IMG/VR virus record: IMGVR_UViG_3300034117_002447
Span: 186,001 to 250,000 of that record
Direction: 5' to 3' (one strand)
Length of the DNA: 64,000 bases
In this document: piece after piece, positions 738 to 18,000 of the stretch
Layout: each line of letters opens with the position of its first letter
How positions within the stretch are numbered: position 1 is the first letter of the stretch
Made by a program: the position numbers and the translations under genes
Notes under the pieces: generated by a model
Told to the model about the DNA's origin: nothing
Databases searched by the model: none
Seen by the model: only the letters and a program-made list of their open reading frames with translations

Positions 738-760
738 TTAGAAATTCAGTTTTACAATAA

Positions 761-2392: not shown

Positions 2393-2397
2393 TAAAG

Positions 2398-2493
2398 ATG
2401 GAACAAGTATATGGAAATTGTGCAGAATGTGAAACAAACGGGCCATTGGATAATCAAGGTTTGTGTTCGATTTGTGGTACTAAAGACAAATAA
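2398..2493 (+). CDS. 31-aa CxxC-x11-CxxC zinc-ribbon-like microprotein
   Basis: MEQVYGNCAECETNGPLDNQGLCSICGTKDK*. It fills the gap between two genes almost exactly and is absent from the ORF track (below the size cutoff). Confidence 0.6.
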   Translation: MEQVYGNCAECETNGPLDNQGLCSICGTKDK

Positions 2494-2506
2494 TCATTTA
2501 TAATAA

Positions 2507-3487: not shown

Positions 3488-3524
3488 TACACAACTAAAA
3501 ATAAAAAAATAAAATAAAACAATA

Positions 3525-3811: not shown

Positions 3812-4558
3812 ATGAAGACACTTAATACTGATGACATTTTCTTAAGAAATTTAACCATTGCTCTGCTTGATCTGCTTAATGGTGAAATGGAAATGAGCTT
3901 ATCCCGTGAAGATCACAAGGACACTTTCAAGGTTCCATTCGTTTATAATTACGGAACTGACGAGGGATTCCTAAAGGATTTCTATATTGGACTTCCGGAT
4001 AACTGCCGAATTCCGGTAGCTGAAGGAACCTATGACATTATCCCTAGAGGAATCGTTACTCTTTCTAGTTTCCAGGTAAAATCATCTGACATGACTAACA
4101 AATTTGTTAGAGGTAGTTTTACTGAAACTGAACGTGGATCAAACGATCAAAATATCTTAACTGGATACTCTGCTCAACTCTTCTCTATTCCATTAGCGGT
4201 TAAGTTCGATGTAAAGATTATATGTGATAACTTAAATAAAGCATTTAAAATCGCTGAAAATATGTTGACAATTAACTACTCAAACCGGGTGGTTTACTTT
4301 CAATACAATGGAGTTAGGATTCCAGCTCAACTGCAATTCCCTGCATCAGAAACAATTGATAAACAGTACAAATTCAGCTTAACCGATAGTAACAAAATTA
4401 ATATTACTCTTTCAGTTGACGTTGAGACCTATTTACCGAGCTTCGAAAAGACCTCTAAACGTAAGAGCTCAAATGTAATGGAGCGAATTAACGTAAACCG
4501 TAAAATTGACGGTGGAGACTTAACGGTTGGTAGCGGTTGGACTGATCAGAATAGTTAA
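3812..4558 (+). CDS. Tail sheath stabiliser/terminator, T4 gp15-like
   Basis: FLRNLTIALLDLLN...KVPFVY and PLAVKFDVKII parallel the T4 gp15 segments FRRYATLMGDLFS...RVPITY. Confidence 0.6.
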   Translation: MKTLNTDDIFLRNLTIALLDLLNGEMEMSLSREDHKDTFKVPFVYNYGTDEGFLKDFYIGLPDNCRIPVAEGTYDIIPRGIVTLSSFQVKSSDMTNKFVRGSFTETERGSNDQNILTGYSAQLFSIPLAVKFDVKIICDNLNKAFKIAENMLTINYSNRVVYFQYNGVRIPAQLQFPASETIDKQYKFSLTDSNKINITLSVDVETYLPSFEKTSKRKSSNVMERINVNRKIDGGDLTVGSGWTDQNS

Positions 4559-5172
4559 TCAAAGTCTAATTCTAAATCGAAATTGTAATACTTAAACGTT
4601 GCAGTAAACGTTGTGAATTGTGGAGTGATTGATGAATAAGATAAATTCATTTCACTTAATGACGTTAGCATTGGTCGATTGAAAATAATCGAAGAAACTG
4701 CATAACCTTCATTGTTTAGAAGAGTCAGCCTGATTGGCTGAAAGAACGGGTGATTTCCATTTGACATTGCTGGCACGGATAGTGCTTGGCCTAATGAATT
4801 TCTTCCAGTATTTTCAGTAGAAACATTGGCTGGGTCCAAGTAGTTAAGAGCATTATCTAAAAAGATAAAGTAATTCAAATACGCGTCTGTTAACTTAAAC
4901 GTCACCTTTAACTCTCTAGTAAATTGATCAGCTATTGGTTTTGAGCTCTGTAATTCTTGAGTTTTTCCAAGTGTCCTAGTTTGAGTAGGAAGAACTGAAC
5001 TAAATCCTGGAAAGTTTACACTTTGCACAGTGGATGCCATAAAGTCCGGAAGAGACTTGTAAGGTAGCAGCAGATTTCTGTAATATTTACTGTACTTCTC
5101 CTGTACAGCAGAATTAAAGAAATCTGCTGGAAAGTTTATAAAAAAGCTGTTCTGTCTAGAATTAAGTATCAT
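4555..5172 (-). CDS. Tail tube terminator/completion protein, T4 gp3-like
   Basis: QSVNFPG, IRLTLLNNEGYAVSSIIFNRPMLTSLSEMNLSY and TATFKYYNFDLE align by eye with gp3 QSVPIPG, ITLYILDNSKTEIVMSINFYKPWVSDLSEVEFSY and TATIPYTYFQVE. Confidence 0.7.
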   Translation of the reverse strand: MILNSRQNSFFINFPADFFNSAVQEKYSKYYRNLLLPYKSLPDFMASTVQSVNFPGFSSVLPTQTRTLGKTQELQSSKPIADQFTRELKVTFKLTDAYLNYFIFLDNALNYLDPANVSTENTGRNSLGQALSVPAMSNGNHPFFQPIRLTLLNNEGYAVSSIIFNRPMLTSLSEMNLSYSSITPQFTTFTATFKYYNFDLELDFD

Positions 5173-5182
5173 ATAGAATTAT

Positions 5183-7915
5183 CTATACGAGAATTTTCTT
5201 AAGTTCAGCGATTACTTGTTCGCTAGTTATCAATTTAGAACACTCAAATTGGCGACTAGTTCCTTTATGATCAGGGCACCAATTCCAGTCTCCGGCATCA
5301 AGTCTCAAACGATTGGCACAGCCTGAGCATGCACCAGCCGGGGCAGCTAATTTAACAATTCCATTATCAGGTTCGTTGTAGGGTTCAGTAAATCCAGATA
5401 CTTGAATGGTTGGGACGTTTGCTGCCCACGCTAACCAAGTTAAGCCGCTGCTTATTCCAATGAATGCTTGACACTCAGATATGTTTTTAACAGCCTCCTC
5501 GATTGAACCTTCCGGTAACTTAGCGGCTCCGATTGGATGGCTATTTCCCATATATCCATCGTGTTCTCTTGACATAATGACTGGTTCATATCCATTTTGT
5601 AATAACCAGTCAGTAACCTCCTGCCAGCCATTTGGATTGTTCCAATATTTGGCTTGAGCAGTTCCGTGAATTCCTAAACCTACTTTTTTAGTGACAGTAG
5701 ATCGGTCGTATGTTTTAATTAAAGGCTTGATTTCAGTGTAGTCTAATCCTAAAATATCAGCAGCAGTTCTCTGTAATGGACCCAACTTAAAATCTCTAGG
5801 ATTCATTGCTGAATCGAACACTTCGTTATTATTGTACCATCCGATTTTATACATTGCATAAAGGCCTGTTATACTGGAACCGGGTGCAACTAATTCGATT
5901 TCCGGATATTGCTCAGCAAATAAGTTATTCCAAAAAGTAGAGCAAACAACTTTACAATTATGTTTCTTTCTGAATTCTTCAACGTAAGGGAACCATGCTA
6001 AATTATCACCTAGCGCCTTAGAGTCAAGTGAAATATAAACCTTCTTTCCAGCAATATTATAATTAATTTCTTCAATGACTTCGCTGTTCTGATCAAGTAT
6101 TTGAATTTTCCAATCTTTAAAGTATTTAGAGTAGGTTTTTGCCCAAGTTTTATTACCTAGAGTAGTTAAAAATTCTTCTGAACCAGTTACATTATTTATG
6201 AATTTAACTGGGTACTTAAAACTTGATGATGTTTCGATTTCAACATAGGCTCCATCCATAAAATTATAATAAACAGTTGGACTCTCTGCGTCTGAGAAAA
6301 GGGTTAATCGATTCATTACGATAAATTCAGATAGGTCGTTTTGTAAAAACTCAGAATAAACGCTCTTTCCTAAATAATTAACGGTTGCCGTTAATCCCTT
6401 TTGGTATTTACCTAGATCAACTAATGAGTAACCGTCTTTCTGTAAGGTTACGAATTTTACAAATTTACCGTATCTAACTTCCAGTAAATAGTCGCTATCT
6501 GCTTTTTCTTCGTGAAATCCTGAAATTAGGTGTAGGTATAAATTTCCATTATCACTCGCAGCTGGATAGATTTGGAATTTACCATCATCTCTTAAGATAC
6601 CGTCTCTATTCCAAACAGCTTGAGTATTTAATTCGTTTGAGTTCGCAATATACTCGGTGTGACCTATGTTAGTTGTAAATTTTCTTAAGTATTCAAGAAA
6701 TACTCTCTCTAACTGCCAGCCCTTTGGCTTATTTGTAAAGTATTCGCGTTTTGTTTTTATTTGATCCATCATCTTAACGGCGATATCCGTCTTTATCGAA
6801 AAGATGAAAGTTGCCATGAAAGGCGACAATTGAGTGTCTACACTTGAACCTTCGTGATATTCATAGATAATAGCATCATGCAATTTTGATTTTTCCAAGA
6901 AGGCTTGTCTGTATTGGAATGTATCGATTAGGTTATCGTATTCCATGAAGTGAATCATTTTCTTTCCTAGGAATTTACAGAAATTAAAAGCAATCGTCAT
7001 TGATGTCCATATTGCATAATCATGATGGTACGGCATTGCATTGTCAACTTGATAATCTGCAAATCTGGTCCATCTACCGCTTGATACTGAATGATCTTCA
7101 AATTCTGAATTTAAAAGTAGTGGATTTTCTTTATCAAAGATATAGTAATCAACCAATTTTTGAATTTCAGGCTTTATTGCATAGTGAGATACTAATAGGA
7201 TTGGGATACCTGCAAATTCTCTAAGTTTTGAAATACACTCAATTAGGTCCTGCTCTTTTTCTGGAGTATTAGGCCACGTGTCTAAAACAAAAATGTCATC
7301 CTTATATTCTTCGGAAATAATAATGGATTCTGGAGTAGGCTTATTATAGAGTTGGTCATTCTTAATTCCGCCCTTTACTCCAAAGAAATAGAGATCTCCA
7401 GGATGAGCTGTATATTCAAAGACTCCGTCTGGAAATGCTTGCTCAAAACCTTTAACTTCACGAATGGCCGCTTCAGTTAAATTCTTATAATAGTCAGACC
7501 ATTCTTCTGAAATATTCGCAAGCAGTGGAGCGGCTGAACTGCCGTCTGATCTGCGAGTTCCGTGTTCAGGTCTACCAGTTGAAGCACATGTAAAAATGAA
7601 TGCTCCTCCAGGTTTTAGCATTCGGATAATATTCTGTAGCGATTTCTCATAGAACATGTCGTGTTCAAATACTTCAGTTGAAATAATAAGATCAAACTGT
7701 TCGTTTGGTGCATCGTATAGATGAGCGACTTGAATAACGTCTACGTTTGGACCTTCACCTACATCTAATCCAATATAGTTACAATCGGTTAAGAAGAATC
7801 GGTTATTTCCATTAATATCAAGAGATCCGATATCTAGGACCTTTTTTCCAGTGAAATACTGCGGAAATACTTCACTCATTTTTTTACAAAATTCTTGCTG
7901 TTGAGGATGTGCCAT
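5183..7915 (-). CDS. Fusion: class I SAM methyltransferase + unassigned central domain + Aah/TibC-family (autotransporter heptosyltransferase-like) protein O-glycosyltransferase
   Basis: N-terminal VLDIGS...STEVFEHD...LKPGG. C-terminal LGDNLAWFPYVEEFRKKHNC...YPEI, FIGISSGLTWLAWA and the four-Cys cluster CSGC...WCPDHKGTSRQFECSKLI typical of TibC/Aah. Confidence 0.8.
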   Translation of the reverse strand: MAHPQQQEFCKKMSEVFPQYFTGKKVLDIGSLDINGNNRFFLTDCNYIGLDVGEGPNVDVIQVAHLYDAPNEQFDLIISTEVFEHDMFYEKSLQNIIRMLKPGGAFIFTCASTGRPEHGTRRSDGSSAAPLLANISEEWSDYYKNLTEAAIREVKGFEQAFPDGVFEYTAHPGDLYFFGVKGGIKNDQLYNKPTPESIIISEEYKDDIFVLDTWPNTPEKEQDLIECISKLREFAGIPILLVSHYAIKPEIQKLVDYYIFDKENPLLLNSEFEDHSVSSGRWTRFADYQVDNAMPYHHDYAIWTSMTIAFNFCKFLGKKMIHFMEYDNLIDTFQYRQAFLEKSKLHDAIIYEYHEGSSVDTQLSPFMATFIFSIKTDIAVKMMDQIKTKREYFTNKPKGWQLERVFLEYLRKFTTNIGHTEYIANSNELNTQAVWNRDGILRDDGKFQIYPAASDNGNLYLHLISGFHEEKADSDYLLEVRYGKFVKFVTLQKDGYSLVDLGKYQKGLTATVNYLGKSVYSEFLQNDLSEFIVMNRLTLFSDAESPTVYYNFMDGAYVEIETSSSFKYPVKFINNVTGSEEFLTTLGNKTWAKTYSKYFKDWKIQILDQNSEVIEEINYNIAGKKVYISLDSKALGDNLAWFPYVEEFRKKHNCKVVCSTFWNNLFAEQYPEIELVAPGSSITGLYAMYKIGWYNNNEVFDSAMNPRDFKLGPLQRTAADILGLDYTEIKPLIKTYDRSTVTKKVGLGIHGTAQAKYWNNPNGWQEVTDWLLQNGYEPVIMSREHDGYMGNSHPIGAAKLPEGSIEEAVKNISECQAFIGISSGLTWLAWAANVPTIQVSGFTEPYNEPDNGIVKLAAPAGACSGCANRLRLDAGDWNWCPDHKGTSRQFECSKLITSEQVIAELKKILV

Positions 7916-7922
7916 TTGTTAA

Positions 7923-8588
7923 TTATCTTTTTGTTATAATAGTTATACCGTTTAGGAAATTTACAGATTCAATATCTGTTCTGATTTCCAAACCTTTTTC
8001 TTTTGTTTGTTTAGTTAGGAAGTCTTCTCTTCGTGCATGAACGTTCCAAAATTCTTCCTGCATTTGACCGTTAAAGTTAACATCGTCTACTAGCTTTTTG
8101 CAGAATTCAATTGACGAACCTGGATGCATAAAGCCGCCTTCCCAATCTTCCCAATACGAAGTTGAAGTATCTTCAATAACGTAGACTCCTTCAGGTTTTA
8201 CGTAGTCAATTAGATTATTAAATGAGATAATTACATGTCGATTGATATGTGAACCGTCATCAAGTACCATATCAAATGGTCCCCATTTTTTAGCGACCCA
8301 ATTTAAGAACTGAGGATCGTCTTGTGAACCTATTTCAACAAAAACATTTTTACTAGAGTCTTCGTATTGTTTACATGAAGGTTCAATATCAATTCCTATA
8401 ATTGTTGCATTTGGATAGTATTCTCTCCAAGTCGAAAGAGATTCTCCGTGAAGAACTCCGATTTCAAGAATGGTTAAAGGTTCTAATCGATTGAACGGTA
8501 ACCATTTTTCGTACTTTTCACAGTAATTGTGAATTTCTGAAGATTTGTCTGTGCCTTTAGACTTGGCAATAGTATTTAGTGATCTCAT
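7923..8588 (-). CDS. SAM-dependent O-methyltransferase, MycE-like sugar methyltransferase family
   Basis: GTDKS..H.Y, ILEIGV..G.SL..W, GSQDD and FDMVLDDGSH motifs. Confidence 0.7.
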   Translation of the reverse strand: MRSLNTIAKSKGTDKSSEIHNYCEKYEKWLPFNRLEPLTILEIGVLHGESLSTWREYYPNATIIGIDIEPSCKQYEDSSKNVFVEIGSQDDPQFLNWVAKKWGPFDMVLDDGSHINRHVIISFNNLIDYVKPEGVYVIEDTSTSYWEDWEGGFMHPGSSIEFCKKLVDDVNFNGQMQEEFWNVHARREDFLTKQTKEKGLEIRTDIESVNFLNGITIITKR

Positions 8589-8601
8589 ATAAGAGTATGG
8601 G

Positions 8602-11388
8602 TTATTTCCAAAAGTAGATTAATTGTAGTGCATTATTGTAGCCGCACATTAGCATGTAAGAATTAAAACCTAGTTTATTTAGTCGACTAACGAAATTGTT
8701 TCTAAGGTCTTCATTAAACCCTAAGTGTTCGTGATGGTACTCTACTGCGATATTTCTGATCTTTGATAAATTCTCATCGCTTATTCCATTTAGCGCAATA
8801 ATTTCAGAGCCTTCAATATCTACCTTTAAAAAGTCAATTCGGTCGATTAATTTATTCTCCAGAATGAAATCTAAGGTATATAAGTTTACGTCGTATTGGG
8901 TCTGTAATGGATCTTTATGATGCCATAAGTTAGATCCCCCTAGGTGAGAACTTTCAGTAAGAGTTAAGGTTCCCAAGTTATCAGCAATTGCTGCATTAAA
9001 TAGGACCGCATTTTCTGGAGCATTCTGTTTTAAGATTTCAAAGTATCGACGATCAGGCTCGAAAGTTACAATTTTACTTGCGCCCATGTGATATGCATAT
9101 CGGGTAAAGATTCCAAGATTACCGCCCAAATCCACAACAACATCGCCGGGTCTAACCTTAACTTCTCCATGTTCGTAATCTTTTAGATTATAGATCTCAT
9201 GATAGATTGCGTAATCCCAACCGTATTGATGAGCAATATCCATTGTTCCTCCTGGTACATCTTTAATTGAGCCAAGATTTTTGATTTCATTTTTACCAAC
9301 AAAGAAGTATTCAGTATCGTGGAAGTTTTTATCACGCTGAGTCTCGATATAGTCTGTCATAACCGTTGCGAATCCAAGATCTTTATTTCCATGAAAGTAG
9401 AGAATATTTGATTTATCTTTAGGTACGAATTGCCAGCCGAATATTTTTCCAAAGTTCTTTGGGCCAGAGTCTCTCCAAAACGAGATAAAGTGTTCCATTG
9501 CTTTGCCAGTTGTTCCCAATAAGTCGCCGTCCCATTCTGAGACATCAAAGTTTGAAATTGGCAAAAATGTCGTAAAATTGTGTTTACTTCTCAAGTAATT
9601 ATCGAGACCTTCATCGTTCCATTGTAGTAATTCGTCGTATTGGTCAAGCGGTGTTTCTTTGTACATTTTAAGAATCTCATCAAAGAACCAGGTACACTCT
9701 TTATTGTAGACGTACATGCAAATATGAGCCTTTGTAAATAACCTCTTGACACCATCTCGGTCGCAGATACTTTGGTTAAATAATTGTCTTCCACGAAGTC
9801 CGTCTTTTCTGGTAAAGAAGCCAATAAAATCGTCCTGTATGTGAACGTCTGGAATTGGATAATTTGTAATCTGGCTAAAGTACTTAACGATATTGTCAAT
9901 ATTATAATTTGCAACAATATCTCCGTCTAACCAAACTAAATTCTCGAAACTTTCTTGAATAGCTGCTTCTTTACACGCATACTGTTTCCAATACCATTTA
10001 TCGTGTTCTGAATGATATGGAATACTTAATGTTCGGCTAATAACGTTTGGATGATTAAACGGAACTTCACAGTCTATTCCATATACGAGAATTTTACGAT
10101 TTGAGAATTTAGCTAACGATATAACTAATTTCTCAATGATTGGCATGTATGCTAGATTACCACAGGTCACCCATGCAAAGTCAGTTGAGTATTCAATTGA
10201 CTGCGGGCTAATAAGTTCCTGAATGTGATCTTGTGCGATCGTGGCAGCATTCTGCCAAGTAAATTCATTTCTAATTTGTTCTGATTCCATTAATGCTGAT
10301 TTTTTATAATTTTCAAACTGGTCGTAAACTAGTCTAAGTTTTATTTGAAGATCTGAGAAATTAGGCTCACAGAAATTACCTGGAGTATTCTGATTCCAAG
10401 ACTCCTCATTTGCTACACCTGCTGGAACTTCGCCAATAATTGAAACTGGAATACCCTTACCTTGAGCAAACTGCAGTTGTGCTCCCCAATTTGAGTACAT
10501 TGATGGAACTCCGCATGACATTGCCTCAATTAATGGAAGATTCCAGCCTTCACTTCTGGCACATGACACAAAAACGTCAGCCGACTTAAGTAGTTTTACG
10601 TAATCTTCTTTTGACTGATGGTGTAGTACTTTAATTCCTGAATGAGAAAGCTCAAACTTAGCTAATCTCTCCTCAGTAGAAGAGAGGCCGTCCGTTGCAA
10701 ATCGATTATCTACGCTAATGACAAGCTCAACATTCTCATCTTGTGAAAAGGTTTCAGTAAAAGCTCTGATAATTTCTTTGGTTGACTTACGATATTCCCA
10801 GCGACCCACTACGACAAATCGGAAAGGCCTGTTCTCTGGAAAAGCCGAATCCGGTGAGGTCGGTTTAAACATCTCAGTGTCTACTCCCTCTGGTACAACT
10901 TTTACTTTATGTGATGCGATTCCTTGCTCAATTGTGCACTGTTTTTGCCATTCACTAGGAACCCAAACTTGATCGAACTTTTTAAGTTGAGCAAAGAAGT
11001 CTTCAGGTTGTCTAGTTGTTTCCCATACATTGTATGCAATTGATGGACCTGAGTAATCTTGGCTAAAGTACAGGTGACCTGTGTCATTTAGCACAATATT
11101 AACAGTTGGCTCAGTAGATTGAATTGGGTACTTCAAGTATAGAGGAAACTCCGCATGACCTGTTTGAGTACCTAACGTTTGTTCAGATAACATCGTCTTT
11201 AACTCAGAGTCTATATAATACTCCCCATTGTGAGGCTCATCGTCATTGTAACCTTTCCATGAATCGCCGATCGTCCAATTTCTAACTGAAACTGGCGTTA
11301 ATTGATTTAGAGCTTTAAAGAAATTTCGTGAATGGCAATTATATCCGGTATCGCCTATTATTGAAGTGTGAGCTTTGATTAGAGTCAT
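8602..11388 (-). CDS. Tri-domain enzyme: GT4 (GT-B) glycosyltransferase + GT-A-like DxD domain + FkbM-family methyltransferase
   Basis: GRWEYRK and DVFVSCARSEGWNLPLIEAMSCGVP (GT4); VWLDGDIV (DxD); VVDLGGNLG...FEPD...LKVDIEGSE (FkbM). Start moved to the ATG at 11388 (MTLIKAH). Confidence 0.8.
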   Translation of the reverse strand: MTLIKAHTSIIGDTGYNCHSRNFFKALNQLTPVSVRNWTIGDSWKGYNDDEPHNGEYYIDSELKTMLSEQTLGTQTGHAEFPLYLKYPIQSTEPTVNIVLNDTGHLYFSQDYSGPSIAYNVWETTRQPEDFFAQLKKFDQVWVPSEWQKQCTIEQGIASHKVKVVPEGVDTEMFKPTSPDSAFPENRPFRFVVVGRWEYRKSTKEIIRAFTETFSQDENVELVISVDNRFATDGLSSTEERLAKFELSHSGIKVLHHQSKEDYVKLLKSADVFVSCARSEGWNLPLIEAMSCGVPSMYSNWGAQLQFAQGKGIPVSIIGEVPAGVANEESWNQNTPGNFCEPNFSDLQIKLRLVYDQFENYKKSALMESEQIRNEFTWQNAATIAQDHIQELISPQSIEYSTDFAWVTCGNLAYMPIIEKLVISLAKFSNRKILVYGIDCEVPFNHPNVISRTLSIPYHSEHDKWYWKQYACKEAAIQESFENLVWLDGDIVANYNIDNIVKYFSQITNYPIPDVHIQDDFIGFFTRKDGLRGRQLFNQSICDRDGVKRLFTKAHICMYVYNKECTWFFDEILKMYKETPLDQYDELLQWNDEGLDNYLRSKHNFTTFLPISNFDVSEWDGDLLGTTGKAMEHFISFWRDSGPKNFGKIFGWQFVPKDKSNILYFHGNKDLGFATVMTDYIETQRDKNFHDTEYFFVGKNEIKNLGSIKDVPGGTMDIAHQYGWDYAIYHEIYNLKDYEHGEVKVRPGDVVVDLGGNLGIFTRYAYHMGASKIVTFEPDRRYFEILKQNAPENAVLFNAAIADNLGTLTLTESSHLGGSNLWHHKDPLQTQYDVNLYTLDFILENKLIDRIDFLKVDIEGSEIIALNGISDENLSKIRNIAVEYHHEHLGFNEDLRNNFVSRLNKLGFNSYMLMCGYNNALQLIYFWK

Positions 11389-11486
11389 TGACTTGATAAT
11401 TGTTTCTATTTTATACTCGATTTTTATATTTTGTTTAGGTAAACCGTAAAAAATATTTAAGTATAAAAGTAAAAACACAAAGATAC

Positions 11487-12077
11487 GTGGAACGAAGATT
11501 AATGTTTCCTCAAAAAGAGGTAGAATTATTGAACTGGTACTGGTTTAGCGAGGGCTTCTCAGCGGAAGAAATTGATAGAGTTCGCAAAGTATCAGAACTT
11601 TTTGAATATCATCAAGCTGTTACTTTTGGAAATCAAGGAGAAAACCATAAAATTAGAAAGAGCAAAATTAAATGGTTAGGCGAGAATAACGAATCGACTA
11701 AATGGATTTATGATAAGTTGATGGAATTTGCAATAATTGCAAATCGAGAACTTTGGAATTTTGACCTAATATCAATAATTGACTCAATCCAGTACACTGA
11801 ATATTATGAAGGTGGTGGTCACTATGATTACCATGTAGATCTTGGACCAGGTTCAGCATCTCACCGGAAAATTAGTATTGTTGTACAATTAAGCGACCCT
11901 TCTGAATACGAAGGCGGCGATTTTGAAATACTTAAAGGAATAACTCCTGATAAATTGCCCCGAAATAAGGGAGCAACTATTTTATTCCCAAGTTACCTAT
12001 TACATAGAGTAACTCCAGTAACCAAAGGAATTAGGCGAAGCCTAGTTATTTGGATAGGAGGAAATTCATTAAGATAA
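11487..12077 (+). CDS. 2OG-Fe(II) oxygenase, prolyl-4-hydroxylase/PKHD-like
   Basis: HxD (YDYHVD), RKISIVVQLSDPSEYEGG, distal His in HRVTPVTKG and the 2OG-binding RRSLV; GTG start. Confidence 0.85.
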   Translation: MERRLMFPQKEVELLNWYWFSEGFSAEEIDRVRKVSELFEYHQAVTFGNQGENHKIRKSKIKWLGENNESTKWIYDKLMEFAIIANRELWNFDLISIIDSIQYTEYYEGGGHYDYHVDLGPGSASHRKISIVVQLSDPSEYEGGDFEILKGITPDKLPRNKGATILFPSYLLHRVTPVTKGIRRSLVIWIGGNSLR

Positions 12078-12083
12078 AGTTAC

Positions 12084-12109
12084 GGGAGAGTCAAAGACTC
12101 TCCCTTTTT
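12084..12109 (+). terminator. Rho-independent terminator between convergent genes
   Basis: Perfect 9-bp stem GGGAGAGTC-AAA-GACTCTCCC followed by TTTTT. Confidence 0.8.
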
Positions 12110-12110
12110 G

Positions 12111-12359: not shown

Positions 12360-12386
12360 TTTACTTTATTTTATTTTTAATACGTA

Positions 12387-14999
12387 TTACATTGGTATAA
12401 CATTAACAAGTAATCCGTTGACAAATTGCAACAGCATCATAGATCGACCATCAAAAACCATTATATCACCAGTATAGCCGCCTCCGCTGCCTCCGCCGCC
12501 TCCATCCGCACCAGGAGGTCCGGGTGCTCCAGCAGGTCCAGTTCCTCCAGGAGTTCCAGCAGGTCCAGCAGGCCCGGCTGGACCAGTTAATCCGGTAGGT
12601 CCAGTTAATCCAGTAGGTCCTTGAATTCCTTGAGGACCTGGGGCACCAGCAGGACCAGTTCCTCCAGGTGAACCGTCTCTACCTGAAGTACCTGAAGAAC
12701 CGGCTTCTCCCCTAGGCCCTTGAATTCCCTGAGGTCCAGTTGCTCCAGCTGGGCCAGTTAATCCAGTAGGGCCAGTTAATCCAGTAGGTCCAGTATTACC
12801 AATTGGACCCTGAATTCCTTGAGGACCAGTAGCTCCAGTAGGACCAGTTATTCCACTTGTACCGGAAGAGCCTGCTTTTCCAGAAGTACCTGAGCTACCT
12901 GGTGCTCCAGCTAATCCAGTAGGTCCAGTTGCCCCAGCCGGGCCTTGAATTCCCTGAGGTCCAATTGGGCCAGTTAATCCAGTAGGTCCTTGAATTCCTT
13001 GAGGACCTGTTCCGCCAGGTGAACCGTCTCTACCGGAAGTACCAGAAGAACCATTTTCTCCCCTAGGGCCTTGAATTCCTTGAGGACCAGTTAATCCGGT
13101 AGGGCCGGTTAATCCAGTAGGTCCAGTATTACCAATTGGACCCTGAATTCCTTGAGGACCAGTAGCTCCAGTAGGACCAGTAGCACCGGTTGGACCAGTT
13201 ATTCCGCTTGTTCCAGAAGTACCTCTTGTTCCAGAAGAACCTGAGCTACCTGATGCACCAGCAGGTCCGATTGGGCCGGTTGCTCCGGCTGGACCTTGAA
13301 TTCCTTGAGGACCAGTAGCACCAGTTGGACCAGTTGCCCATGATCCATATCCTGAACCTGAATACCAAGTATGACCGGTTGGTATAGTAGTAAATCCAGG
13401 ATTCCATTTTAGTGAGCTATTATCTCCGTTTGATGCACATATAAAGATCCATGTATCTGAGGGTCTTTGAGTGTCCGTATATGATTTAACTATTAAATAA
13501 CTTGCGTTATAGGGACTAGCCATTCCCCTAGGAGGTGCATAGTATAGAGCAGACCATGTTCCAAGAGCAACTGTTTCTGGGCCAATATCGAAATGACCAG
13601 CTGTTCCGAAAGCTTTAGCGACAGGTATCGCAATTACTCTACCTGACCAAGTGACATTATTTCCGTCCCATGATACGTTACCTCCACCCGAGACAGTCCA
13701 TGTTGCATTAACTGTGTCGTATTCAGTTGGGCCCTGAGGTCCAGTAGGTCCAAGAGGTCCAGTAGGTCCAAGAGGACCAATCGGACCAGTTGCTCCACTT
13801 GTACCGGAAGTACCTCTTGTTCCAGAAGAACCTGAGCTACCTGGTGCTCCAGTTGGACCAAGAGGACCAGTTGCTCCAGCTGGACCTTGTATTCCTTGAG
13901 GACCAGCAGGTCCGATTGGACCAGTTGCTCCACTTGTACCGGAAGTACCTCTTGTTCCAGAAGAACCTGAGCTACCTGGTGCTCCAGTTGGACCAAGAGG
14001 ACCGGTAGGACCAAGAGGACCAGTTAATCCAGTTGGGCCAGTTTGACCGCTAGTTCCTGAAGAACCATTTGCTCCAGCTGGACCTTGGATTCCTTGAGGA
14101 CCAGTAGGCCCAAGAGGTCCAGTAGCTCCAGCTGGACCTTGAATTCCTTGAGGACCGGTTGGACCGGTTATTCCACTTGTACCAGAAGTACCTCTTGTTC
14201 CAGAAGAACCTGAACTACCTGGTGCTCCAGTTGGGCCGATTGGGCCAGTAGCTCCAGTAGGACCAGTTGGTCCAGTTATTCCGCTTGTTCCAGAAGAACC
14301 ATTTGAACCTGAAGTTCCAGAAGCACCTGACATACCGCTTGTTCCTGAAGAACCAGTAGGACCAGTCGCTCCAGTTGGACCAGTATTACCAATTGGACCT
14401 TGAATACCCTGAGGGCCAGTTGGTCCAGTTATTCCACTAGTTCCAGAAGAACCGTTTGTTCCGGCTGGACCTTGAATACCCTGAGGACCGGTTGGTCCAG
14501 TTATTCCACTTGTACCAGAAGTACCAGCAGTTCCTGAAGTACCTCTTGTTCCAGAAGAACCTGAGCTACCGGGTGCTCCAGTAGGTCCAGTTGCTCCAGT
14601 TGGACCTTGAATTCCTTGAGGACCAGTTGGACCAGTTATTCCACTTGTACCAGAAGTACCAGCAGTTCCTGAAGTACCTCTTGTTCCAGAAGAACCTGAC
14701 GAACCGGATGTACCTGAAGTACCTCGTGTTCCGGAAGAACCTGAACTGCCGTTTGAGCCTGACGTTCCGCTTGTTCCAGAAGAACCTGCGGCTGACACCC
14801 AAGAGGTTCCATTAAACCTATAAATGTTTTTATCTGCTCGATTGTAGAGAATCGCGCCTTCCTTTGCATTAGCTCGACCTCTACTTATATTATCAACTAG
14901 AGTTAGAGCAAAACCGTTTACGCCGGAGGTTCCAGCGGTTCCGCTTGTACCTTCTCCAAATTCTACTCCGCCTGGTGCATTAATTTTATAACTACTCAT
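12387..14999 (-). CDS. Collagen-like fibre protein (GPT/GPQ/GIQ triplets interleaved with GSS/GTS triplets) with a central ~130-aa globular insert
   Basis: Gly at every third residue over most of the 870 aa; non-repetitive insert at about 13340-13725. Confidence 0.85.
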
Positions 15000-15013: not shown

Positions 15014-18000
15014 TTATGGAAGCATTCCATTACTTATTATTTCATATCTAGCTGCTAATGTAATACGATTATTGGCATTATTGTTAATCTTTACAGCAAG
15101 ATCAGTTCCACCGGCTCCGACTGTAATTGTGGCAGTCCATAGGGATGCATCTTGAGCAACAACAATTTCGGTGAAACCTGCACCTACTAGTGAAAGAGCA
15201 CCGGCTATATTCTTAACCGCTCCAGTGTAGTGGCGATAATCAGTTGAACCGGTAACCTCTTCAGAACCTACTACGTATAATTCAATACCGTATATTCGAT
15301 TAGGGGTTGGAAAGTCAAATAGGATAGGTGTACCTGGATCAATGAATAATTGACCAGCTGCCATGGGGTTAATCCGTCCAGAATAGAGTACTCCATTATG
15401 AACTAATTTTTCGCGATCGTCAGATGCAGACTGTTTACCGTAAATGTATTCTTTAGGTCGACCGTCATATAGTGCAACTGGTCCTAATAGTAAAACATCA
15501 TTAGTATCGTCTTCTCTAATATCGAAAGTTGAATCTTCAATAGTAGTCCCAGAAGCACCGTATGTTACGTATGTATTAAATGTACCGGACGTTGTGATTG
15601 ACGTACCTGATGTTCCAGCTGAACCTGAAGTACCAGAAGTACCTCTTGTTCCAGAAGAACCTGAAGTACCTGAAGAACCTGTTCCACCAGGTGCACCAGT
15701 TGCTCCACTAGTTCCAGAAGTACCAGAAGTACCTCTTGTTCCAGAAGAACCAGACGAACCGGATGTTCCAGCCGTACCGCTTGAGCCGTTTGAACCAAAT
15801 GTTACAAACGAAATTGTATAGTTTATTCCATTCGTTAGTGTTCCATTTGCGGCGATTGGCGCAAGTCCAAGATCAAACCATGTTGTGTTATTGGTAATTG
15901 AAATAAGTCTGTAAATACCTATTATGCTATTATTACCAACTTCGGTAATTTGAATTAAGCTATTAGAGGTTATTAATGATAACCAGGTTGCGTAGTTTAC
16001 ACTAGCAGAAGAAGTTGTAGATACGCTAAGTTTAGCTAGCGCAGCGAAGGTAGCACTATCTGTTCTAAAGAATGTTGCTCCAGGGTTAGAGTGTGCTGGT
16101 ATACTTGAATCAAATAACCATCTACCGCTATTTGAACCGTCAATACCGGCAATACCAGTCGCTCCGGATGTTCCGCTTGAGCCGTTTGAACCAGAAGTAC
16201 CAGAAGTACCTCTTGTTCCAGAAGAACCAGAAGAACCATTTGAACCAGAAGTACCAGAAGAACCAGAAGAACCATTTGAACCAGAAGTACCAGAAGAACC
16301 AGAAGTACCAGAAGTACCTCTTGTTCCAGAAGAACCAGAAGAACCATTTGAACCAGAAGTACCAGAAGAGCCTGATGTACCAGACACTCCGTCTATACCG
16401 GAGGTTCCGCTTGAACCAGCTGATCCTGAAGTACCACTTGAGCCGTTTGAACCAGAAGTTCCAGAAGTACCGCTTGTGCCTCTTGTTCCAGAAGAACCTG
16501 AGCTACCATTTGAACCGGAAGTTCCGCTTGATCCATTTGAACCTGAAGTTCCTGATGTACCTGAAGAACCGTTTGAGCCGCTTGTTCCAGAAGAACCTGA
16601 GCTACCATTTGAACCGCTTGTTCCACTTGATCCATTTGAACCAGATGTTCCAGACGTTCCAGAAGAACCGTTTGAACCGGATGTACCTGAACTTCCAGCT
16701 GAACCTGATGTTCCAGAAGAACCGTTAGAACCGGAAGTACCTGATGTTCCACTTGAGCCGTTTGCACCAGAAGTACCTGATGTACCGCTTGATCCATTTG
16801 AACCTGAAGTACCTGATGTACCACTAGTACCTCGTGTCCCAGACGAACCTGAGCTACCATTTGAACCGGATGTACCTGAAGAACCTGAAGTTCCGGATAC
16901 TCCGTCTATACCAGAAGTTCCGCTTGAACCGGAAGTACCTGAAGTACCAGAAGTACCTCTTGTTCCAGAAGAACCAGAAGAACCATTTGAACCGGAAGTA
17001 CCAGATGTACCTGAACTTCCATTAGAACCTGACGTACCTGAAGTACCTGAGCTACCATTAGAACCCGAAGTTCCACTTGATCCATTTGAACCAGAAGTAC
17101 CAGATGTTCCAGAAGAACCGTTAGAGCCGGATGTTCCGGAAGTTCCGCTTGATCCATTTGAACCAGATGTACCTGAAGTTCCACTTGAGCCGTTAGAACC
17201 AGATGTTCCTGAAGTACCAGAAGTACCTCTTGTTCCAGAAGAACCTGAACTACCGTTTGAACCTGAAGTACCAGAGCTTCCATTCGAACCAGAAGTACCT
17301 GAAGAACCACTTGTACCACTTGAGCCGTTTGAACCTGACGTTCCAGAAGAACCATTTGAACCTGAAGTTCCCGAAGTTCCCGAAGAACCATTTGAACCTG
17401 AAGTTCCAGAAGAACCATTTGAACCTGATGTACCTGATGTGCCTGAAGAACCGGCTGTTCCAGAAGTACCGCTTGTACCGCTTGTACCTCTTGTTCCAGA
17501 AGAACCTGAGCTACCATTTGAACCTGACGTACCGGAACTACCATTTGAACCGGAAGTACCTGACGAACCTGAAGTTCCTGATACTCCATCTATACCAGAT
17601 GTTCCACTTGATCCGTTTGAACCTGACGTTCCAGATGTACCAGATGTTCCTGAAGTACCTCTTGTTCCAGAAGAACCGGAGCTACCGTTTGAGCCTGACG
17701 TACCTGAACTTCCATTTGAACCTGAAGTTCCGCTTGTTCCAGAAGAACCATTTGAACCAGATGTTCCTGAAGTTCCAGAAGAACCATTTGAACCGGAAGT
17801 ACCAGAGGTTCCACTTGATCCATTTGAACCGGAAGTACCAGAGGTTCCACTTGATCCATTTGAACCAGATGTACCTGATGTACCGCTTGTGCCTCTTGTT
17901 CCAGAAGAACCGGAGCTACCGTTTGAGCCTGAAGTACCTGAACTTCCATTTGAACCTGAAGTTCCGCTTGTACCTGAGCTACCATTAGAACCGCTTGTAC

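What the first reader, a model, noticed from the sequence alone, without database searches (positions are those of the whole stretch)
5183..7915. Aah/TibC-type iron-binding protein glycosyltransferase in a phage, fused to a methyltransferase
Seen: the C-terminal ~360 aa keeps the N-terminal beta module (YNFMDG...KYFKDWKI), the GDxxAWFPY core and four Cys (CSGC, WCP, FEC; about 5239-5335). Established: TibC/Aah are Fe-Cys4 oligomeric enzymes that transfer heptose from ADP-heptose to Ser in repetitive autotransporter passengers. Seen: no heptose-synthesis genes in this window. Many Bacteroidota LPS are reported to lack heptose. Inference: the substrate is the Ser-rich fibre, the donor may not be heptose, and the fused methyltransferase may cap the sugar. 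The ~350-aa central domain is unassigned.
Basis: partly seen in the sequence, partly recalled or inferred. Interest (0 to 1): 0.7.

Follow-up and report, generated by a model that had tools for sequence, protein, structure and literature searches.

The report
TibC-like glycosyltransferase for phage fibres
A 271-kb phage encodes a three-enzyme fusion whose last domain closely matches TibC, the E. coli enzyme that glycosylates adhesins, and comparison with related loci indicates that it glycosylates the phage's own giant serine-rich collagen-like fibres instead.

Summary
Window 5183-7915 (-) is an intact 910-aa ORF. Residues 545-908 score 270.7 bits against NCBIfam TIGR04414 (Aah/TibC; cut-off 200). 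The folded domain superposes on TibC (TM 0.86), well ahead of the LPS GT9 enzymes (TM about 0.5). The catalytic Asp, the phosphate-binding Thr and Lys, the sugar-contacting Trp and all four iron-finger Cys are kept.

Residues 1-190 are a class I SAM methyltransferase. The "unassigned" middle is a GT-A-fold glycosyltransferase-like module plus a beta-sandwich, so the protein is a three-enzyme fusion. It sits in a conserved cassette (GT4-X-FkbM protein, MycE/TylE-type sugar O-methyltransferase, 2OG oxygenase) beside the genome's only two collagen-like genes (870 and 3730 aa; the larger is 34% Ser).

In a tree, the phage enzymes fall in a clade separate from the classical autotransporter heptosyltransferases. 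Proteins with (G-S/T-S/T)n repeats lie beside 28 of 56 genes of that clade and beside 0 of 37 classical genes, which are mostly followed by AIDA-repeat proteins. The fibre is therefore the likely acceptor.

The donor is unresolved. The adenine-contacting Arg286 is lost across the phage clade, and a Microcystis phage carries the same enzyme. However, many Bacteroidota encode ADP-heptose genes. Nothing has been tested biochemically.

The parts
5183..7915 (-). Intact 910-aa ORF (P0001): methyltransferase, GT-A-like module, beta-sandwich and TibC-type glycosyltransferase in one chain
   Evidence: There are more than 1000 homologues of about 910 aa with E <= 0.001. The 120 best are 50-96% identical and cover the full query.
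7346..7915 (-). Class I SAM-dependent methyltransferase domain (aa 1-190)
   Evidence: Pfam Methyltransf_23 (E 2.1e-8, 34.5 bits against a cut-off of 27) and Methyltransf_11. phrog_32762 'SAM-dependent methyltransferase', E 2.1e-48. 76 residues are at least 95% conserved in 120 homologues, including the LDIGS, G-DvG and IISTEvFEHDM motifs.
6608..7309 (-). GT-A-fold (nucleotide-diphospho-sugar transferase) module, aa ~203-436, with an invariant E-Y-D at aa 325-327
   Evidence: No Pfam, NCBIfam or PDB sequence hit. The AF2 model has pLDDT 86 and pTM 0.80. VIA-align gives Z 12-14.4 to many GT-A glycosyltransferases and nucleotidyltransferases. The Foldseek top hit is LH3. AFDB hits are mostly GT-A glycosyltransferases. 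The invariants come from alignment A1.
6299..6598 (-). Beta-sandwich module (aa ~440-539) between the GT-A-like and TibC-type domains
   Evidence: Secondary structure of model m28f50dadc7ac shows strands only in model residues 256-355. It is the least conserved part, with 12 residues at least 95% conserved. Its function is unknown. A binding role is my inference.
5192..6283 (-). TibC/Aah-type protein O-glycosyltransferase domain (aa 545-908): N-terminal beta-barrel, GT-B catalytic core and iron finger
   Evidence: TIGR04414 at 270.7 bits. 4rap at E 5.8e-54. AF2 pLDDT 91.4. Foldseek TM 0.86 to TibC over the whole length. D637, T752, K756 and W827 correspond to TibC D110, T226, K230 and W305, while A808 replaces R286.
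5240..5329 (-). Four Cys of the iron-finger motif (C863, C866, C880, C892, matching TibC C339/342/358/370)
   Evidence: They are invariant in all 121 fused and 116 stand-alone phage-type sequences checked, and in the 33 viral representatives.
7923..8588 (-). 221-aa sugar O-methyltransferase homologue (P0003), 7 nt upstream of the fusion gene
   Evidence: Pfam Methyltransf_24. PDB hits are MycE 3ssm (E 1.5e-25) and demethylmacrocin O-methyltransferase 8ia9 (E 2e-22). The same position is kept in related phages.
8602..11478 (-). 958-aa GT4 glycosyltransferase, unassigned middle (lead: GT8-like) and FkbM methyltransferase (P0004). The true start is probably the internal Met (aa 31).
   Evidence: Pfam Glycos_transf_1 (E 9e-15) and Methyltransf_21 (E 1.4e-14). 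TIGR01444. The atlas lead for aa 425-775 scores 0.88, which is a lead only. Syntenic orthologues of 926 and 914 aa occur.
11487..12077 (+). 2OG-Fe(II) oxygenase of the prolyl-4-hydroxylase-like Pfam family, between the glycosylation genes and the fibre genes
   Evidence: PF13640, E 4.7e-14. phrog_61, E 1e-32. HVD and a distal His are visible. Two such genes also lie near the cassette in L010.
12387..14999 (-). 870-aa collagen-like fibre protein (P0005): Gly 29%, Thr 14.5%, Ser 12%, Pro 11%
   Evidence: Pfam Collagen, E 2e-86. Composition. It matches PHROG tail-fibre families.
15014..26206 (-). 3730-aa giant collagen-like fibre protein (P0006): Ser 34%, Gly 29%, Thr 15%, about 1000 G-X-Y triplets, mostly GSS/GTS. 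This is the proposed main acceptor.
   Evidence: The N-terminus matches phrog_33494, and the C-terminal region matches tail-fibre PHROGs. It is one of only two collagen-like genes in the 271-kb genome.
4555..5172 (-). Context: 205-aa tail-tube-like protein, 10 nt downstream of the fusion gene on the same strand
   Evidence: phrog_45 'tail tube', E 3e-8. The next gene, 3812-4558 (+), matches T4 gp15. These place the cassette in the virion structural module.

Best explanation
The gene encodes one polypeptide with three enzyme modules: a SAM methyltransferase, a GT-A-fold glycosyltransferase-like module with a beta-sandwich, and a TibC-type GT-B protein O-glycosyltransferase with a Cys4 metal finger. 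The two genes upstream add a MycE-type sugar O-methyltransferase and a GT4-X-FkbM protein.

Together these form a phage-encoded line that builds a short, probably methylated, O-linked glycan on the phage's own collagen-like fibres.

Proposed steps (all inferred):
1. The TibC-type domain attaches the first sugar to Ser or Thr in the G-S/T-S/T repeats of the 3730-aa and 870-aa fibre proteins, as TibC does on Ser of TibA.
2. The GT-A-like, GT4 and possibly GT8-like modules extend the glycan.
3. The three methyltransferases O-methylate it.

The sugar nucleotides come from the host, because the phage encodes no matching NDP-sugar synthesis pathway.

The identity of the first sugar is unresolved. 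I put about 55% on a donor other than ADP-heptose.

**Shown:** domain identities, conserved catalytic residues, synteny, and the clade-specific pairing with GTS-repeat proteins.

**Inferred:** the acceptor, the order of steps, the methylation target and the donor.
For: **Identity.** TIGR04414 scores above its cut-off. The structural match to TibC is TM 0.86. D110, T226, K230, W305 and the four Cys are invariant in about 240 phage-type sequences.

**Other modules.** The central module has a GT-A fold. The methyltransferase and GT-A modules are the best conserved parts of the protein. P0003 is a MycE/TylE homologue. P0004 has GT4 and FkbM domains.

**Location.**
- The genes lie on one strand with 7-14 nt gaps, inside the tail module.
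- The only two collagen-like genes in 271 kb lie 4.5 kb upstream.
- The three-gene cassette and an adjacent Ser/Gly/Thr-rich giant ORF are conserved in phages whose fusion proteins are only 52-65% identical.

**Clade test.**
- The tree splits into clade A and clade B, each with 100/100 support.
- ORFs with (G[ST][ST])>=4 runs lie in 28 of 56 clade-B loci and 0 of 37 clade-A loci, Fisher p 2e-8.
- Six of eight sampled clade-A downstream genes carry AIDA repeats, as do three of the five plasmid loci by annotation (the other two: an autotransporter beta-barrel protein and a putative autotransporter).
- In bacteria, the clade-B neighbour is a small secreted protein or lipoprotein with a (GTS/GSS)n tract, 89-1000 nt away.
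- Four of five long viral records with no adjacent fibre gene still carry giant collagen-like ORFs elsewhere.
- Three of the 12 clade-discriminating columns lie in the iron finger, which contacts the acceptor in TibC.
- The cultured Microcystis phage Mel-JY01 has the same pairing.

**Donor lean.**
- Arg286, the adenine N1 contact, whose Ala mutant abolishes or greatly reduces TibC activity, is V, I, L, T or A in 33 of 33 viral representatives. It is Arg in 5 of 5 plasmid-borne classical enzymes and in nearly all classical-type genome rows.
- Mel-JY01 has no gmhA-like or rfaE-I-like gene.
- M. aeruginosa LPS is reported to lack heptose (PMC4515613).
Against: - No biochemical or proteomic datum exists for any member of this clade. 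All acceptor evidence is guilt by association.
- Only about half of clade-B loci show a GTS-repeat gene within 8-10 kb. For the stand-alone 385-aa viral type, adjacency is rare.
- The base rate of collagen-like genes in large phage genomes was not measured.
- The central module could be a nucleotidyltransferase or a non-catalytic binding module. IspD and GlmU score as well as true glycosyltransferases.
- The closest characterised relatives are all heptosyltransferases. The heptose-contacting Trp and the phosphate-binding residues are kept. Residue 300 is Ser, as in AAH.
- Roughly half or more of sampled genomes in the presumed host phylum carry rfaE-type genes, so heptose remains a live option.
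- The host of this phage is inferred only from distant relatives at 24-30% identity.
Confidence: 0.55

Rival explanations
1. The acceptor is the same (the phage fibre), but the TibC-type domain is an ordinary ADP-heptose-dependent heptosyltransferase that draws on the host's ADP-heptose pool. The loss of Arg286 is compensated elsewhere in the pocket.
For: TIGR04414 is an equivalog model and is passed. D110, T226, K230 and W305 are all kept, and residue 300 is Ser as in AAH, which accepts both heptose epimers. rfaE domain II passes its cut-off in 96 of 151 genomes, and rfaE domain I in 30 of 61, in the phylum of a Flavobacteriales MAG. The gammaproteobacterial sister group in clade B keeps Arg286 and is also paired with GTS-repeat proteins.
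Against: Arg286 is replaced by a hydrophobic residue in every viral representative, and the TibC R286A mutant loses most of its activity. Further clade-wide changes occur: D256S in 100% of sequences, and W267G. The same enzyme type sits in a cyanophage that has no gmhA-like or rfaE-I-like gene and whose host genus is reported to lack LPS heptose. None of 30 viral records carries gmhA, although most are fragments.
Confidence: 0.3
2. The enzyme does not act on the virion. It modifies a host envelope protein or glycan during infection, for example for superinfection exclusion or host takeover, like other phage glycosyltransferases filed as auxiliary genes.
For: PHROGs files the neighbouring GT4 and 2OG oxygenase families under 'moron, auxiliary metabolic gene and host takeover'. 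In bacteria, the clade-B partners are host cell-surface lipoproteins. Many stand-alone viral copies have no fibre gene nearby.
Against: The cassette lies on the same strand and tightly packed between the fibre genes and a tail-tube-like gene. It stays next to giant Ser-rich fibre genes in phages of 52-65% identity and in Mel-JY01. The repeat type beside the bacterial homologues (GTS/GSS) is the same as in the phage fibres.
Confidence: 0.08
3. The TibC-type domain is catalytically dead or repurposed. It acts as a ring-shaped chaperone or assembly platform for the collagen-like fibre, and only the other modules are enzymes.
For: An essential TibC residue (R286) is missing. In TibC, the ring and iron finger hold and slide the rod-like substrate.
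Against: The catalytic base, both phosphate ligands and the sugar-contacting Trp are invariant across about 240 sequences that are only 45-65% identical overall. This is hard to explain without catalysis.
Confidence: 0.03

Closest known systems
TibC / AAH bacterial autotransporter heptosyltransferases (BAHT family; PDB 4RAP, 4RB4; Yao et al. 2014, PMC4358343)
   Same: The domain plan is the same: N-terminal beta-barrel, GT-B core and Cys4 iron finger. Identity is 32-33% and TM 0.86 over the full length. The catalytic Asp, the Thr/Lys phosphate ligands, the Trp sugar contact and the four Cys are conserved. The likely chemistry is O-glycosylation of Ser in a highly repetitive, rod-like surface protein encoded nearby.
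   Different: - It lies in a separate, well-supported clade.
- The adenine-contacting Arg286 is lost, and 11 further clade-specific substitutions occur, three of them in the iron finger.
- The neighbour is a collagen-like GSS/GTS-repeat protein, not an AIDA-type autotransporter.
- It is encoded by a phage.
- It is fused to two further enzyme modules.
- Donor, iron binding and dodecamer formation are untested.
LPS heptosyltransferases of CAZy family GT9 (WaaC, WaaF; PDB 2H1H, 1PSW)
   Same: The GT-B catalytic core is shared. Pfam PF01075 matches aa 747-846.
   Different: It is only a distant match: TM 0.45-0.55 and E about 1e-8, against 3e-34 for TibC. TIGR02193 scores 28 bits against a cut-off of 185. 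GT9 LPS enzymes lack the beta-barrel and the iron finger and act on Kdo-lipid A, not on protein.
Virion O-glycosylation in mycobacteriophages (Freeman et al. 2023, as summarised in PMC11652166)
   Same: Phage-encoded glycosyltransferases decorate the phage's own structural proteins with O-linked sugars.
   Different: There, the capsid, the tail or both are modified. Here the enzyme is TibC-type, the proposed target is a giant collagen-like fibre, and three methyltransferase domains accompany it. That the enzyme families differ is my own knowledge and was not checked here.
Collagen-modifying multifunctional enzymes: human lysyl hydroxylase LH3 (PDB 6FXM) and Mimivirus L230 (the latter from my own knowledge)
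   Same: They are multi-domain enzymes that pair a GT-A glycosyltransferase with modification of collagen-type G-X-Y repeats. LH3 is the Foldseek top hit of the central module (E 2.5e-6). A 2OG-Fe(II) oxygenase gene sits in the cassette.
   Different: LH3 and L230 glycosylate hydroxylysine. The phage fibres have almost no Lys and are Ser/Thr-rich. The similarity is at fold level only: 8% identity and TM 0.33.
BclA, the collagen-like exosporium glycoprotein of Bacillus anthracis (my own knowledge, not tested here)
   Same: It is a collagen-like G-X-T repeat filament on a surface, O-glycosylated on Thr with oligosaccharides that carry methylated sugars.
   Different: It is bacterial, is made by unrelated glycosyltransferases, and has no TibC-type enzyme.

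Membership tests
BAHT / Aah-TibC family (NCBIfam TIGR04414) | Score above the curated equivalog cut-off over the whole model | tested here: met
   270.7 bits against a cut-off of 200, covering profile positions 10-374 of 374. The whole-genome scan gives 273.5 bits.
BAHT / Aah-TibC family | TibC protomer architecture: N-terminal beta-barrel, GT-B core and iron-finger insertion | tested here: met
   The AF2 model (pLDDT 91.4) aligns to 4rap chains at TM 0.82-0.86 and rmsd about 3 A over about 375-380 columns.
BAHT / Aah-TibC family | Catalytic base Asp110, beta-phosphate ligands Thr226 and Lys230, and sugar contact Trp305 | tested here: met
   These are D637, T752, K756 and W827. They are invariant in the phage-type sequences.
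BAHT / Aah-TibC family | Four Cys that coordinate the ferric ion | tested here: met
   C863, C866, C880 and C892 align with C339, C342, C358 and C370. Metal binding itself cannot be tested with these tools.
BAHT / Aah-TibC family | Arg286 contacting adenine N1, the stated basis of ADP-sugar specificity | tested here: not met
   It is Ala808 here, and V, I, L, T or A in 33 of 33 viral representatives. It is Arg in nearly all classical enzymes.
BAHT / Aah-TibC family | Acceptor is an AIDA-type autotransporter passenger encoded next to the enzyme | tested here: not met
   The genes listed around the cassette include no autotransporter. The neighbours are collagen-like fibres. No clade-A locus (0 of 37) has a GTS-repeat neighbour, while 28 of 56 clade-B loci do.
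BAHT / Aah-TibC family | Donor is ADP-heptose | not testable with these tools
   The evidence is indirect and conflicting.
BAHT / Aah-TibC family | Dodecameric ring assembly | not testable with these tools
   No usable computational evidence was obtained.
LPS heptosyltransferases (GT9: WaaC, WaaF) | Equivalog-level similarity to heptosyltransferase I or II and no TibC-specific insertions | tested here: not met
   TIGR02193 scores 28.3 bits against 185.3, and TIGR02195 scores 16.2 against 134.6. These enzymes rank structurally below all TibC chains.
GT-A fold glycosyltransferases (central module) | Nucleotide-diphospho-sugar transferase (GT-A) fold | tested here: met
   Z is 12-14.4 over about 165-195 aligned residues against many GT-A enzymes. 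Foldseek and AFDB hits agree.
GT-A fold glycosyltransferases (central module) | DxD-type metal and nucleotide-sugar binding motif, and membership of a defined GT family | tested here: inconclusive
   An invariant E-Y-D (aa 325-327) follows a central strand where DxD usually sits. No residue-level superposition was possible. There is no Pfam or NCBIfam match. Nucleotidyltransferases score equally well.
Class I SAM-dependent methyltransferases (N-terminal module) | Pfam family score above the gathering cut-off and conserved SAM-binding motifs | tested here: met
   Methyltransf_23 scores 34.5 against 27, and Methyltransf_11 scores 29.8 against 21.2. The motifs are conserved in 120 homologues. The substrate is unknown.

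The most novel reading that the evidence does not exclude
Clade B is an unrecognised branch of the TibC family. Its natural acceptors are (Gly-Ser/Thr-Ser/Thr)n collagen-like repeats rather than autotransporter beta-helices. In its phage sub-branch it has changed nucleotide-sugar donor.

Large phages of several host phyla use it, fused or clustered with further glycosyltransferases and O-methyltransferases. With it they coat fibres that could reach about a micrometre in length with a methylated O-glycan, giving a virus-made, mucin-like glycoprotein coat. A ring-shaped enzyme may thread the rod-like fibre and act processively.
Probability: 0.35. Interest if true: 0.85.

Novelty: new variant of a known kind. 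Interest (0 to 1): 0.68.

Why it matters
TibC and AAH are known only as virulence-associated enzymes that heptosylate autotransporter adhesins in Proteobacteria. This work indicates a second, very abundant branch: 451 IMG/VR contigs, and more than 1000 protein clusters of the 910-aa fusion alone. That branch is paired with a different class of acceptor, Ser/Thr-rich collagen-like repeats, and phages have recruited it into their virion modules.

If the fibres are glycosylated, several consequences follow:
- Post-translational glycosylation of phage fibres would be common in environmental jumbo phages. That bears on adsorption, protease resistance, stickiness to mucus or polysaccharide, and antibody recognition.
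- It would give a defined enzyme-substrate pair for attaching sugars to simple GSS/GTS repeats.
- It would explain why these phages carry clusters of glycosyltransferases and sugar methyltransferases that are usually filed as 'auxiliary' genes.

A cultured phage with the same arrangement, Microcystis phage Mel-JY01, makes the question directly testable.

Tried and rejected
1. **Homo-oligomer prediction.** Two copies of the TibC-type domain gave 'no answer' (score 0.05, mark 0.42). This is not evidence either way.
2. **Sequence searches for the central module.** Pfam, NCBIfam and a PDB profile search found nothing. Only the fold search assigned it.
3. **Comparison of the two middle regions.** A profile comparison of the central module with the unassigned middle of P0004 showed no similarity (probability 0.2%).
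4. **Literature searches.** Searches for a TibC-type or heptosyltransferase enzyme in phages, for Mel-JY01, and for jumbo phage plus collagen-like plus glycosyltransferase found nothing relevant. 'TIBC' mostly matched iron-binding capacity.
5. **Promoter and terminator scan of 4000-16000.** Counts did not exceed shuffles. One good hairpin lies at 12084-12104.
6. **First co-location count.** The strict G-X-Y criterion on 80 redundant loci gave 32 of 80. I replaced it with de-duplicated, clade-aware counts.
8. **gmhA in viral records.** gmhA was sought in 30 viral records carrying the enzyme and none was found. Most records are fragments of under 50% completeness, so this carries little weight.
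9. **Phage epimerase as HldD.** I considered whether the phage SDR epimerase (G000:C1:42489-43412) is the heptose epimerase HldD. Its best match is galE-like (176 bits), with heptose_epim at 114 bits against a cut-off of 275, and it lies beside the portal gene, so I did not count it as a heptose gene.
10. **GC rise as horizontal transfer.** I rejected the GC rise over 12-26 kb (0.46 against 0.36) as a sign of horizontal transfer. It coincides with the Gly/Ser/Thr repeat genes, so I attribute it to their codon composition (inference).

Full report
**1. Observation**

Window 5183-7915 (-) is an uninterrupted 910-aa ORF. Residues 546-908 match NCBIfam TIGR04414, 'autotransporter strand-loop-strand O-heptosyltransferase' (Aah/TibC). 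The score is E 1.9e-80 and 270.7 bits against a curated cut-off of 200, covering positions 10-374 of the 374-position model.

phmmer against PDB sequences finds only TibC (4rap, E 5.8e-54, aa 545-907) and its D110A mutant 4rb4. The four Cys are residues 863, 866, 880 and 892 (nt 5240-5329). Residues 1-109 match Pfam Methyltransf_23 and Methyltransf_11 above their cut-offs, and aa 1-181 match phrog_32762 at E 2e-48.

**2. Setting**

The window is bases 186001-250000 of a 271,290-bp IMG/VR virus record rated 100% complete. Several features mark it as a large tailed phage:
- a T4-type portal and a gp15-like sheath stabiliser
- a tail-tube match
- a late sigma factor and GroEL
- a tmRNA

A 1199-aa protein of unknown function (phrog_29329) finds its nearest cultured relatives among phages of Flavobacterium, Chryseobacterium, Tenacibaculum and Prevotella, plus Sphingomonas phage PAU. 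Identity is only 24-30%, so a Bacteroidota host is a reasonable but weak inference.

The gene order on the minus strand is as follows:

| Coordinates | Product |
|---|---|
| 15014-26206 | 3730-aa fibre |
| 12387-14999 | 870-aa fibre |
| 12111-12359 | 82-aa ORF |
| 8602-11478 | GT4-X-FkbM protein |
| 7923-8588 | methyltransferase |
| 5183-7915 | the fusion |
| 4555-5172 | tail-tube-like protein |

A 2OG-Fe(II) oxygenase lies on the plus strand at 11487-12077. Gaps between the minus-strand genes from 8602 down are 7-14 nt.

**3. Anatomy of the protein**

a. *TibC-type domain (aa 545-908).* An AlphaFold2 model built with 30 homologues has pLDDT 91.4 and pTM 0.89.
   - Foldseek against PDB returns all TibC chains first (TM 0.82-0.86, E down to 3e-34, 32-33% identity, whole length). 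WaaF, a Veillonella GT9 enzyme and WaaC follow only at TM 0.45-0.55 and E about 1e-8.
   - Using the residue roles given in the TibC paper (PMC4358343) and the alignment, the correspondences are as follows.

   | TibC residue | Role | Here |
   |---|---|---|
   | D110 | catalytic base | D637 |
   | T226, K230 | beta-phosphate ligands | T752, K756 |
   | W305 | heptose O4 contact | W827 |
   | P300 (S294 in AAH) | selectivity position | S822 |
   | C339, C342, C358, C370 | iron ligands | C863, C866, C880, C892 |
   | R286 | adenine N1 contact | A808 (not conserved) |

b. *Central region (aa ~185-545).* It has no Pfam, NCBIfam or PDB sequence match.
   - A model built with 27 homologues (pLDDT 86, pTM 0.80) shows an alpha/beta domain (aa ~203-436) followed by an all-beta module (aa ~440-539).
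   - VIA-align gives Z 12-14.4 to dozens of GT-A-fold proteins. Some are glycosyltransferases (mannosylglycerate synthase, ArnC, POMGNT1, hyaluronan synthase, TarP, glycogenin, LgtC). Others are nucleotidyltransferases (IspD, GlmU).
   - The Foldseek top hit is human collagen lysyl hydroxylase/glycosyltransferase LH3. AFDB cluster hits are mostly GT-A glycosyltransferases.
   - An invariant E-Y-D (aa 325-327) follows a central strand where DxD usually lies, and there is no Gly-rich nucleotidyltransferase loop. I read it as a GT-A-type glycosyltransferase module. This is an inference.
   - The ESM Atlas shows that this module occurs only in viruses. It is found alone (about 330 aa) or fused to GT25, GT4, GT2 or TibC-type domains.

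c. *Methyltransferase (aa 1-190).* This and the GT-A module are the most conserved parts of the protein across 120 homologues.

**4. Neighbours**

- P0003 (221 aa) matches the sugar O-methyltransferases MycE (3ssm, E 1.5e-25) and demethylmacrocin O-methyltransferase (8ia9, E 2e-22).
- P0004 has a GT4 domain and an FkbM methyltransferase domain. Its middle region is unassigned, and the only lead is GT8-like at atlas score 0.88.
- The plus-strand gene is a PF13640 2OG-Fe(II) oxygenase.
- P0005 matches Pfam Collagen at E 2e-86.
- P0006 is 34% Ser, 29% Gly and 15% Thr, with about 1000 G-X-Y triplets, mostly GSS or GTS. Its ends match PHROG families of tail fibres.
- These two are the only collagen-like genes in the 271-kb genome.

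**5. The wider family**

The full 910-aa architecture is common. More than 1000 clusters have E <= 0.001, and the top 120 are 50-96% identical, on contigs of up to 258 kb. One of them is deposited at NCBI as 'Glycosyltransferase Aah/TibC [uncultured Caudovirales phage]'. The TibC-type domain alone finds 2484 proteins and 451 IMG/VR contigs.

In two phages whose fusion proteins are 65% and 52% identical to this one, the same triad is kept: a GT4-X-FkbM protein, a methyltransferase and the fusion. Next to it lies a giant ORF of 2513 or 2575 aa with about 23% Ser, 20% Gly and 15% Thr and GSS/GTS repeats.

PHROGs v4 has no family for the TibC-type or central modules. I found no paper on TibC-type enzymes in phages.

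**6. Tree and residue 286**

I built a maximum-likelihood tree (IQ-TREE, LG+C20) from 98 de-duplicated domains: 33 viral, 60 from bacterial genomes or MAGs, and 5 from plasmids. It splits into two clades, each with 100/100 support.
- *Clade A* (42 rows) holds the E. coli TibC/AAH-type, Burkholderiales, Lentisphaerota and similar enzymes.
- *Clade B* (56 rows) holds a gammaproteobacterial subclade, a few long branches, and a 44-row subclade (support 98/83). That subclade contains every viral sequence plus some sequences binned into MAGs.

The Arg286 column is Arg in 5 of 5 plasmid-borne classical enzymes, in all but one row of clade A, and in the gammaproteobacterial subclade. It is V, I, L, T or A in all 44 rows of the phage subclade.

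Eleven more columns separate clade A from the phage subclade, for example D256S (100% on both sides) and W267G. Three of them (345, 350, 355) lie inside the iron finger, which in TibC contacts the acceptor TibA.

**7. Acceptor**

I scanned the 8-10 kb flanks for ORFs containing runs of at least four G-[ST]-[ST] triplets.
- Such ORFs occur in 28 of 56 clade-B loci and in 0 of 37 clade-A genome loci (Fisher p 2e-8).
- In clade A the downstream gene carries AIDA repeats in 6 of 8 sampled loci. In the five plasmid loci it is an autotransporter or adhesin by annotation: AIDA-repeat (2), YadA-like (1), autotransporter beta-barrel (1) and putative autotransporter (1).
- In clade-B bacteria (Methylococcales, other Gammaproteobacteria, a Burkholderiaceae MAG) the neighbour lies 89-1000 nt away. 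It is a small protein with a signal peptide or lipobox and a (GTS/GSS)n tract.
- In phages the neighbour is a fibre of 300-3700 aa.
- Four of five long viral records with no such gene within 10 kb still carry collagen-like ORFs of 1088-4590 aa elsewhere.

The pairing of this branch with GTS-type repeats therefore holds in both cells and viruses. It is the main argument that the fibre is the acceptor. It remains an association and is not a demonstration.

**8. A cultured example**

Microcystis phage Mel-JY01 (PP395634.1, 190 kb) encodes a 1226-aa protein annotated 'methyltransferase FkbM'.
- It consists of a GT4 domain, a region homologous to the central module and a TibC-type domain.
- It has the phage-type residues: I at position 286, and S256, G267 and R345.
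- About 1.7 kb upstream, the plus strand encodes a GSS/GTS collagen-like protein of at least 1016 aa that runs off the start of the record.
- The deposited minus-strand CDSs over this stretch are Pro/Val/Glu-rich and look like antisense artefacts.

**9. Donor**

*For ADP-heptose:*
- All characterised relatives use it.
- W305, K230 and T226 are kept.
- Residue 300 is Ser, as in AAH.
- In a sample of the phylum of a Flavobacteriales MAG, rfaE domain II passes its cut-off in 96 of 151 genomes and rfaE domain I in 30 of 61, and the two genes are often adjacent.

*Against ADP-heptose:*
- Arg286 is lost clade-wide, and its Ala mutant cripples TibC.
- There are further pocket-region substitutions.
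- Mel-JY01 has no gmhA-like or rfaE-I-like gene, and M. aeruginosa LPS is reported to lack heptose and KDO (PMC4515613).
- The phage genome here has nothing resembling gmhA, rfaE-I, rfaE-II or NTP_transferase. It has one galE-like SDR next to the portal gene.

I put about 55% on a donor other than ADP-heptose.

**10. Mechanism proposed**

- The TibC-type domain primes Ser or Thr of the G-S/T-S/T repeats. This is inferred from homology and pairing.
- The GT-A-like, GT4 and possibly GT8-like modules extend the glycan, and the three methyltransferases O-methylate it. This is inferred from domain identities, especially the MycE-type enzyme.
- Host pools supply the sugar nucleotides.
- TibC holds a rod-like beta-helix inside a ring and slides it past its active sites. 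A collagen-type rod could be handled in the same way, but this is speculation. If P0006 forms a collagen triple helix, its roughly 3000 repeat residues would span several hundred nanometres, using the standard rise of about 0.29 nm per residue (my own knowledge).

**11. Verdict**

- The identification is correct.
- Strict membership of the BAHT 'equivalog' fails on two defining features, Arg286 and the autotransporter acceptor. The donor and the oligomeric state are untested.
- I file it as a new variant of a known kind: a TibC-like protein O-glycosyltransferase branch with a different acceptor class, recruited by phages and fused into a multi-enzyme protein.

Main caveats:
- There are no experimental data.
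- The host is unknown.
- Adjacency holds for only about half of the loci.
- The catalytic status of the GT-A-like module is uncertain.
- Many MAG-labelled clade-B contigs may really be phage DNA.

Noticed in passing
window 300-666 (+): The phage carries a full-length tmRNA gene. ARAGORN reads the tag peptide as GNTNFWSLVNESVNAPVTEELLAA. Rfam RF00023 scores 129 bits against a gathering score of 47, covering model positions 1-374 of 374.
   Followed up: partly
window 11487-12077 (+): A 2OG-Fe(II) oxygenase of the prolyl-4-hydroxylase-like Pfam family PF13640 sits between the glycosylation genes and the collagen-like fibre genes. Two such genes lie near the cassette in a related phage (L010:203-1557). 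This suggests hydroxylation of the fibres (P0005 is 11% Pro), but that was not examined.
   Followed up: partly
window 15014-26206 (-) and 12387-14999 (-): One ORF of 3730 aa consists almost entirely of GSS/GTS collagen-type triplets, interrupted by two non-repeat regions (aa ~1235-1420 and ~3380-3500). GC rises to 0.46-0.48 over these genes, against 0.35-0.38 elsewhere. I attribute this to the codon composition of the Gly/Ser/Thr repeats and see no need to invoke foreign origin (not tested).
   Followed up: partly
L180 (Microcystis phage Mel-JY01, PP395634.1) 1-3049: The deposited record annotates two Pro/Val/Glu-rich 'hypothetical proteins' on the minus strand (1-651 and 739-2298). The plus strand over the same stretch encodes a GSS/GTS collagen-like fibre of at least 1016 aa that is cut by the record's start. 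The annotated CDSs look like antisense artefacts. The 1226-aa 'methyltransferase FkbM' is really a GT4, central-module and TibC-type fusion.
   Followed up: yes
L108-L112, L120 (Gammaproteobacteria MAGs); L094, L097, L099, L104 (Methylococcales); L096: Small bacterial proteins of 120-320 aa lie next to TibC-like genes. The gammaproteobacterial and L096 proteins have a Cys-containing lipobox-like signal; the Methylococcales ones have a plain signal peptide. All carry a long (GTS/GSS)n tract. The gammaproteobacterial ones end in a poly-Asp/Glu tail. They appear to be an undescribed class of probably glycosylated surface proteins.
   Followed up: partly
G000:C1:42489-43412 (+), outside the window: This is the only SDR epimerase/dehydratase gene in the phage. 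It is galE-like (176 bits, below the cut-off of 262) and lies immediately after the T4-type portal gene. It might adjust a host NDP-sugar for the glycosylation cassette.
   Followed up: partly
G000:C1:89521-91224 (+), outside the window: This is a third Ser/Thr/Gly-rich ORF (568 aa, up to 77% S+T+G in a 150-aa window) without G-X-Y periodicity. It could be another acceptor and was not examined.
   Followed up: no
window 57660-59243 (+), 55571-55990 (-), 38495-45328 (-): The phage encodes a GroEL chaperonin (phrog_5725, E 1e-158), a late sigma factor and a 2277-aa structural-module protein of unknown function.
   Followed up: no
window 12084-12104 (+): A strong G+C-rich hairpin (9 pairs) followed by a T-run lies right after the oxygenase gene, between it and the convergent 82-aa ORF. 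It is the best terminator-like site in the region.
   Followed up: no
window 8602-11478 (-) and 11487-12077 (+): Both listed ORFs start with GTG, only 8 nt apart, and point in divergent directions. The real starts are probably the internal Met codons (aa 31 of P0004 and aa 6 of the oxygenase), which would leave a more plausible divergent promoter region.
   Followed up: no
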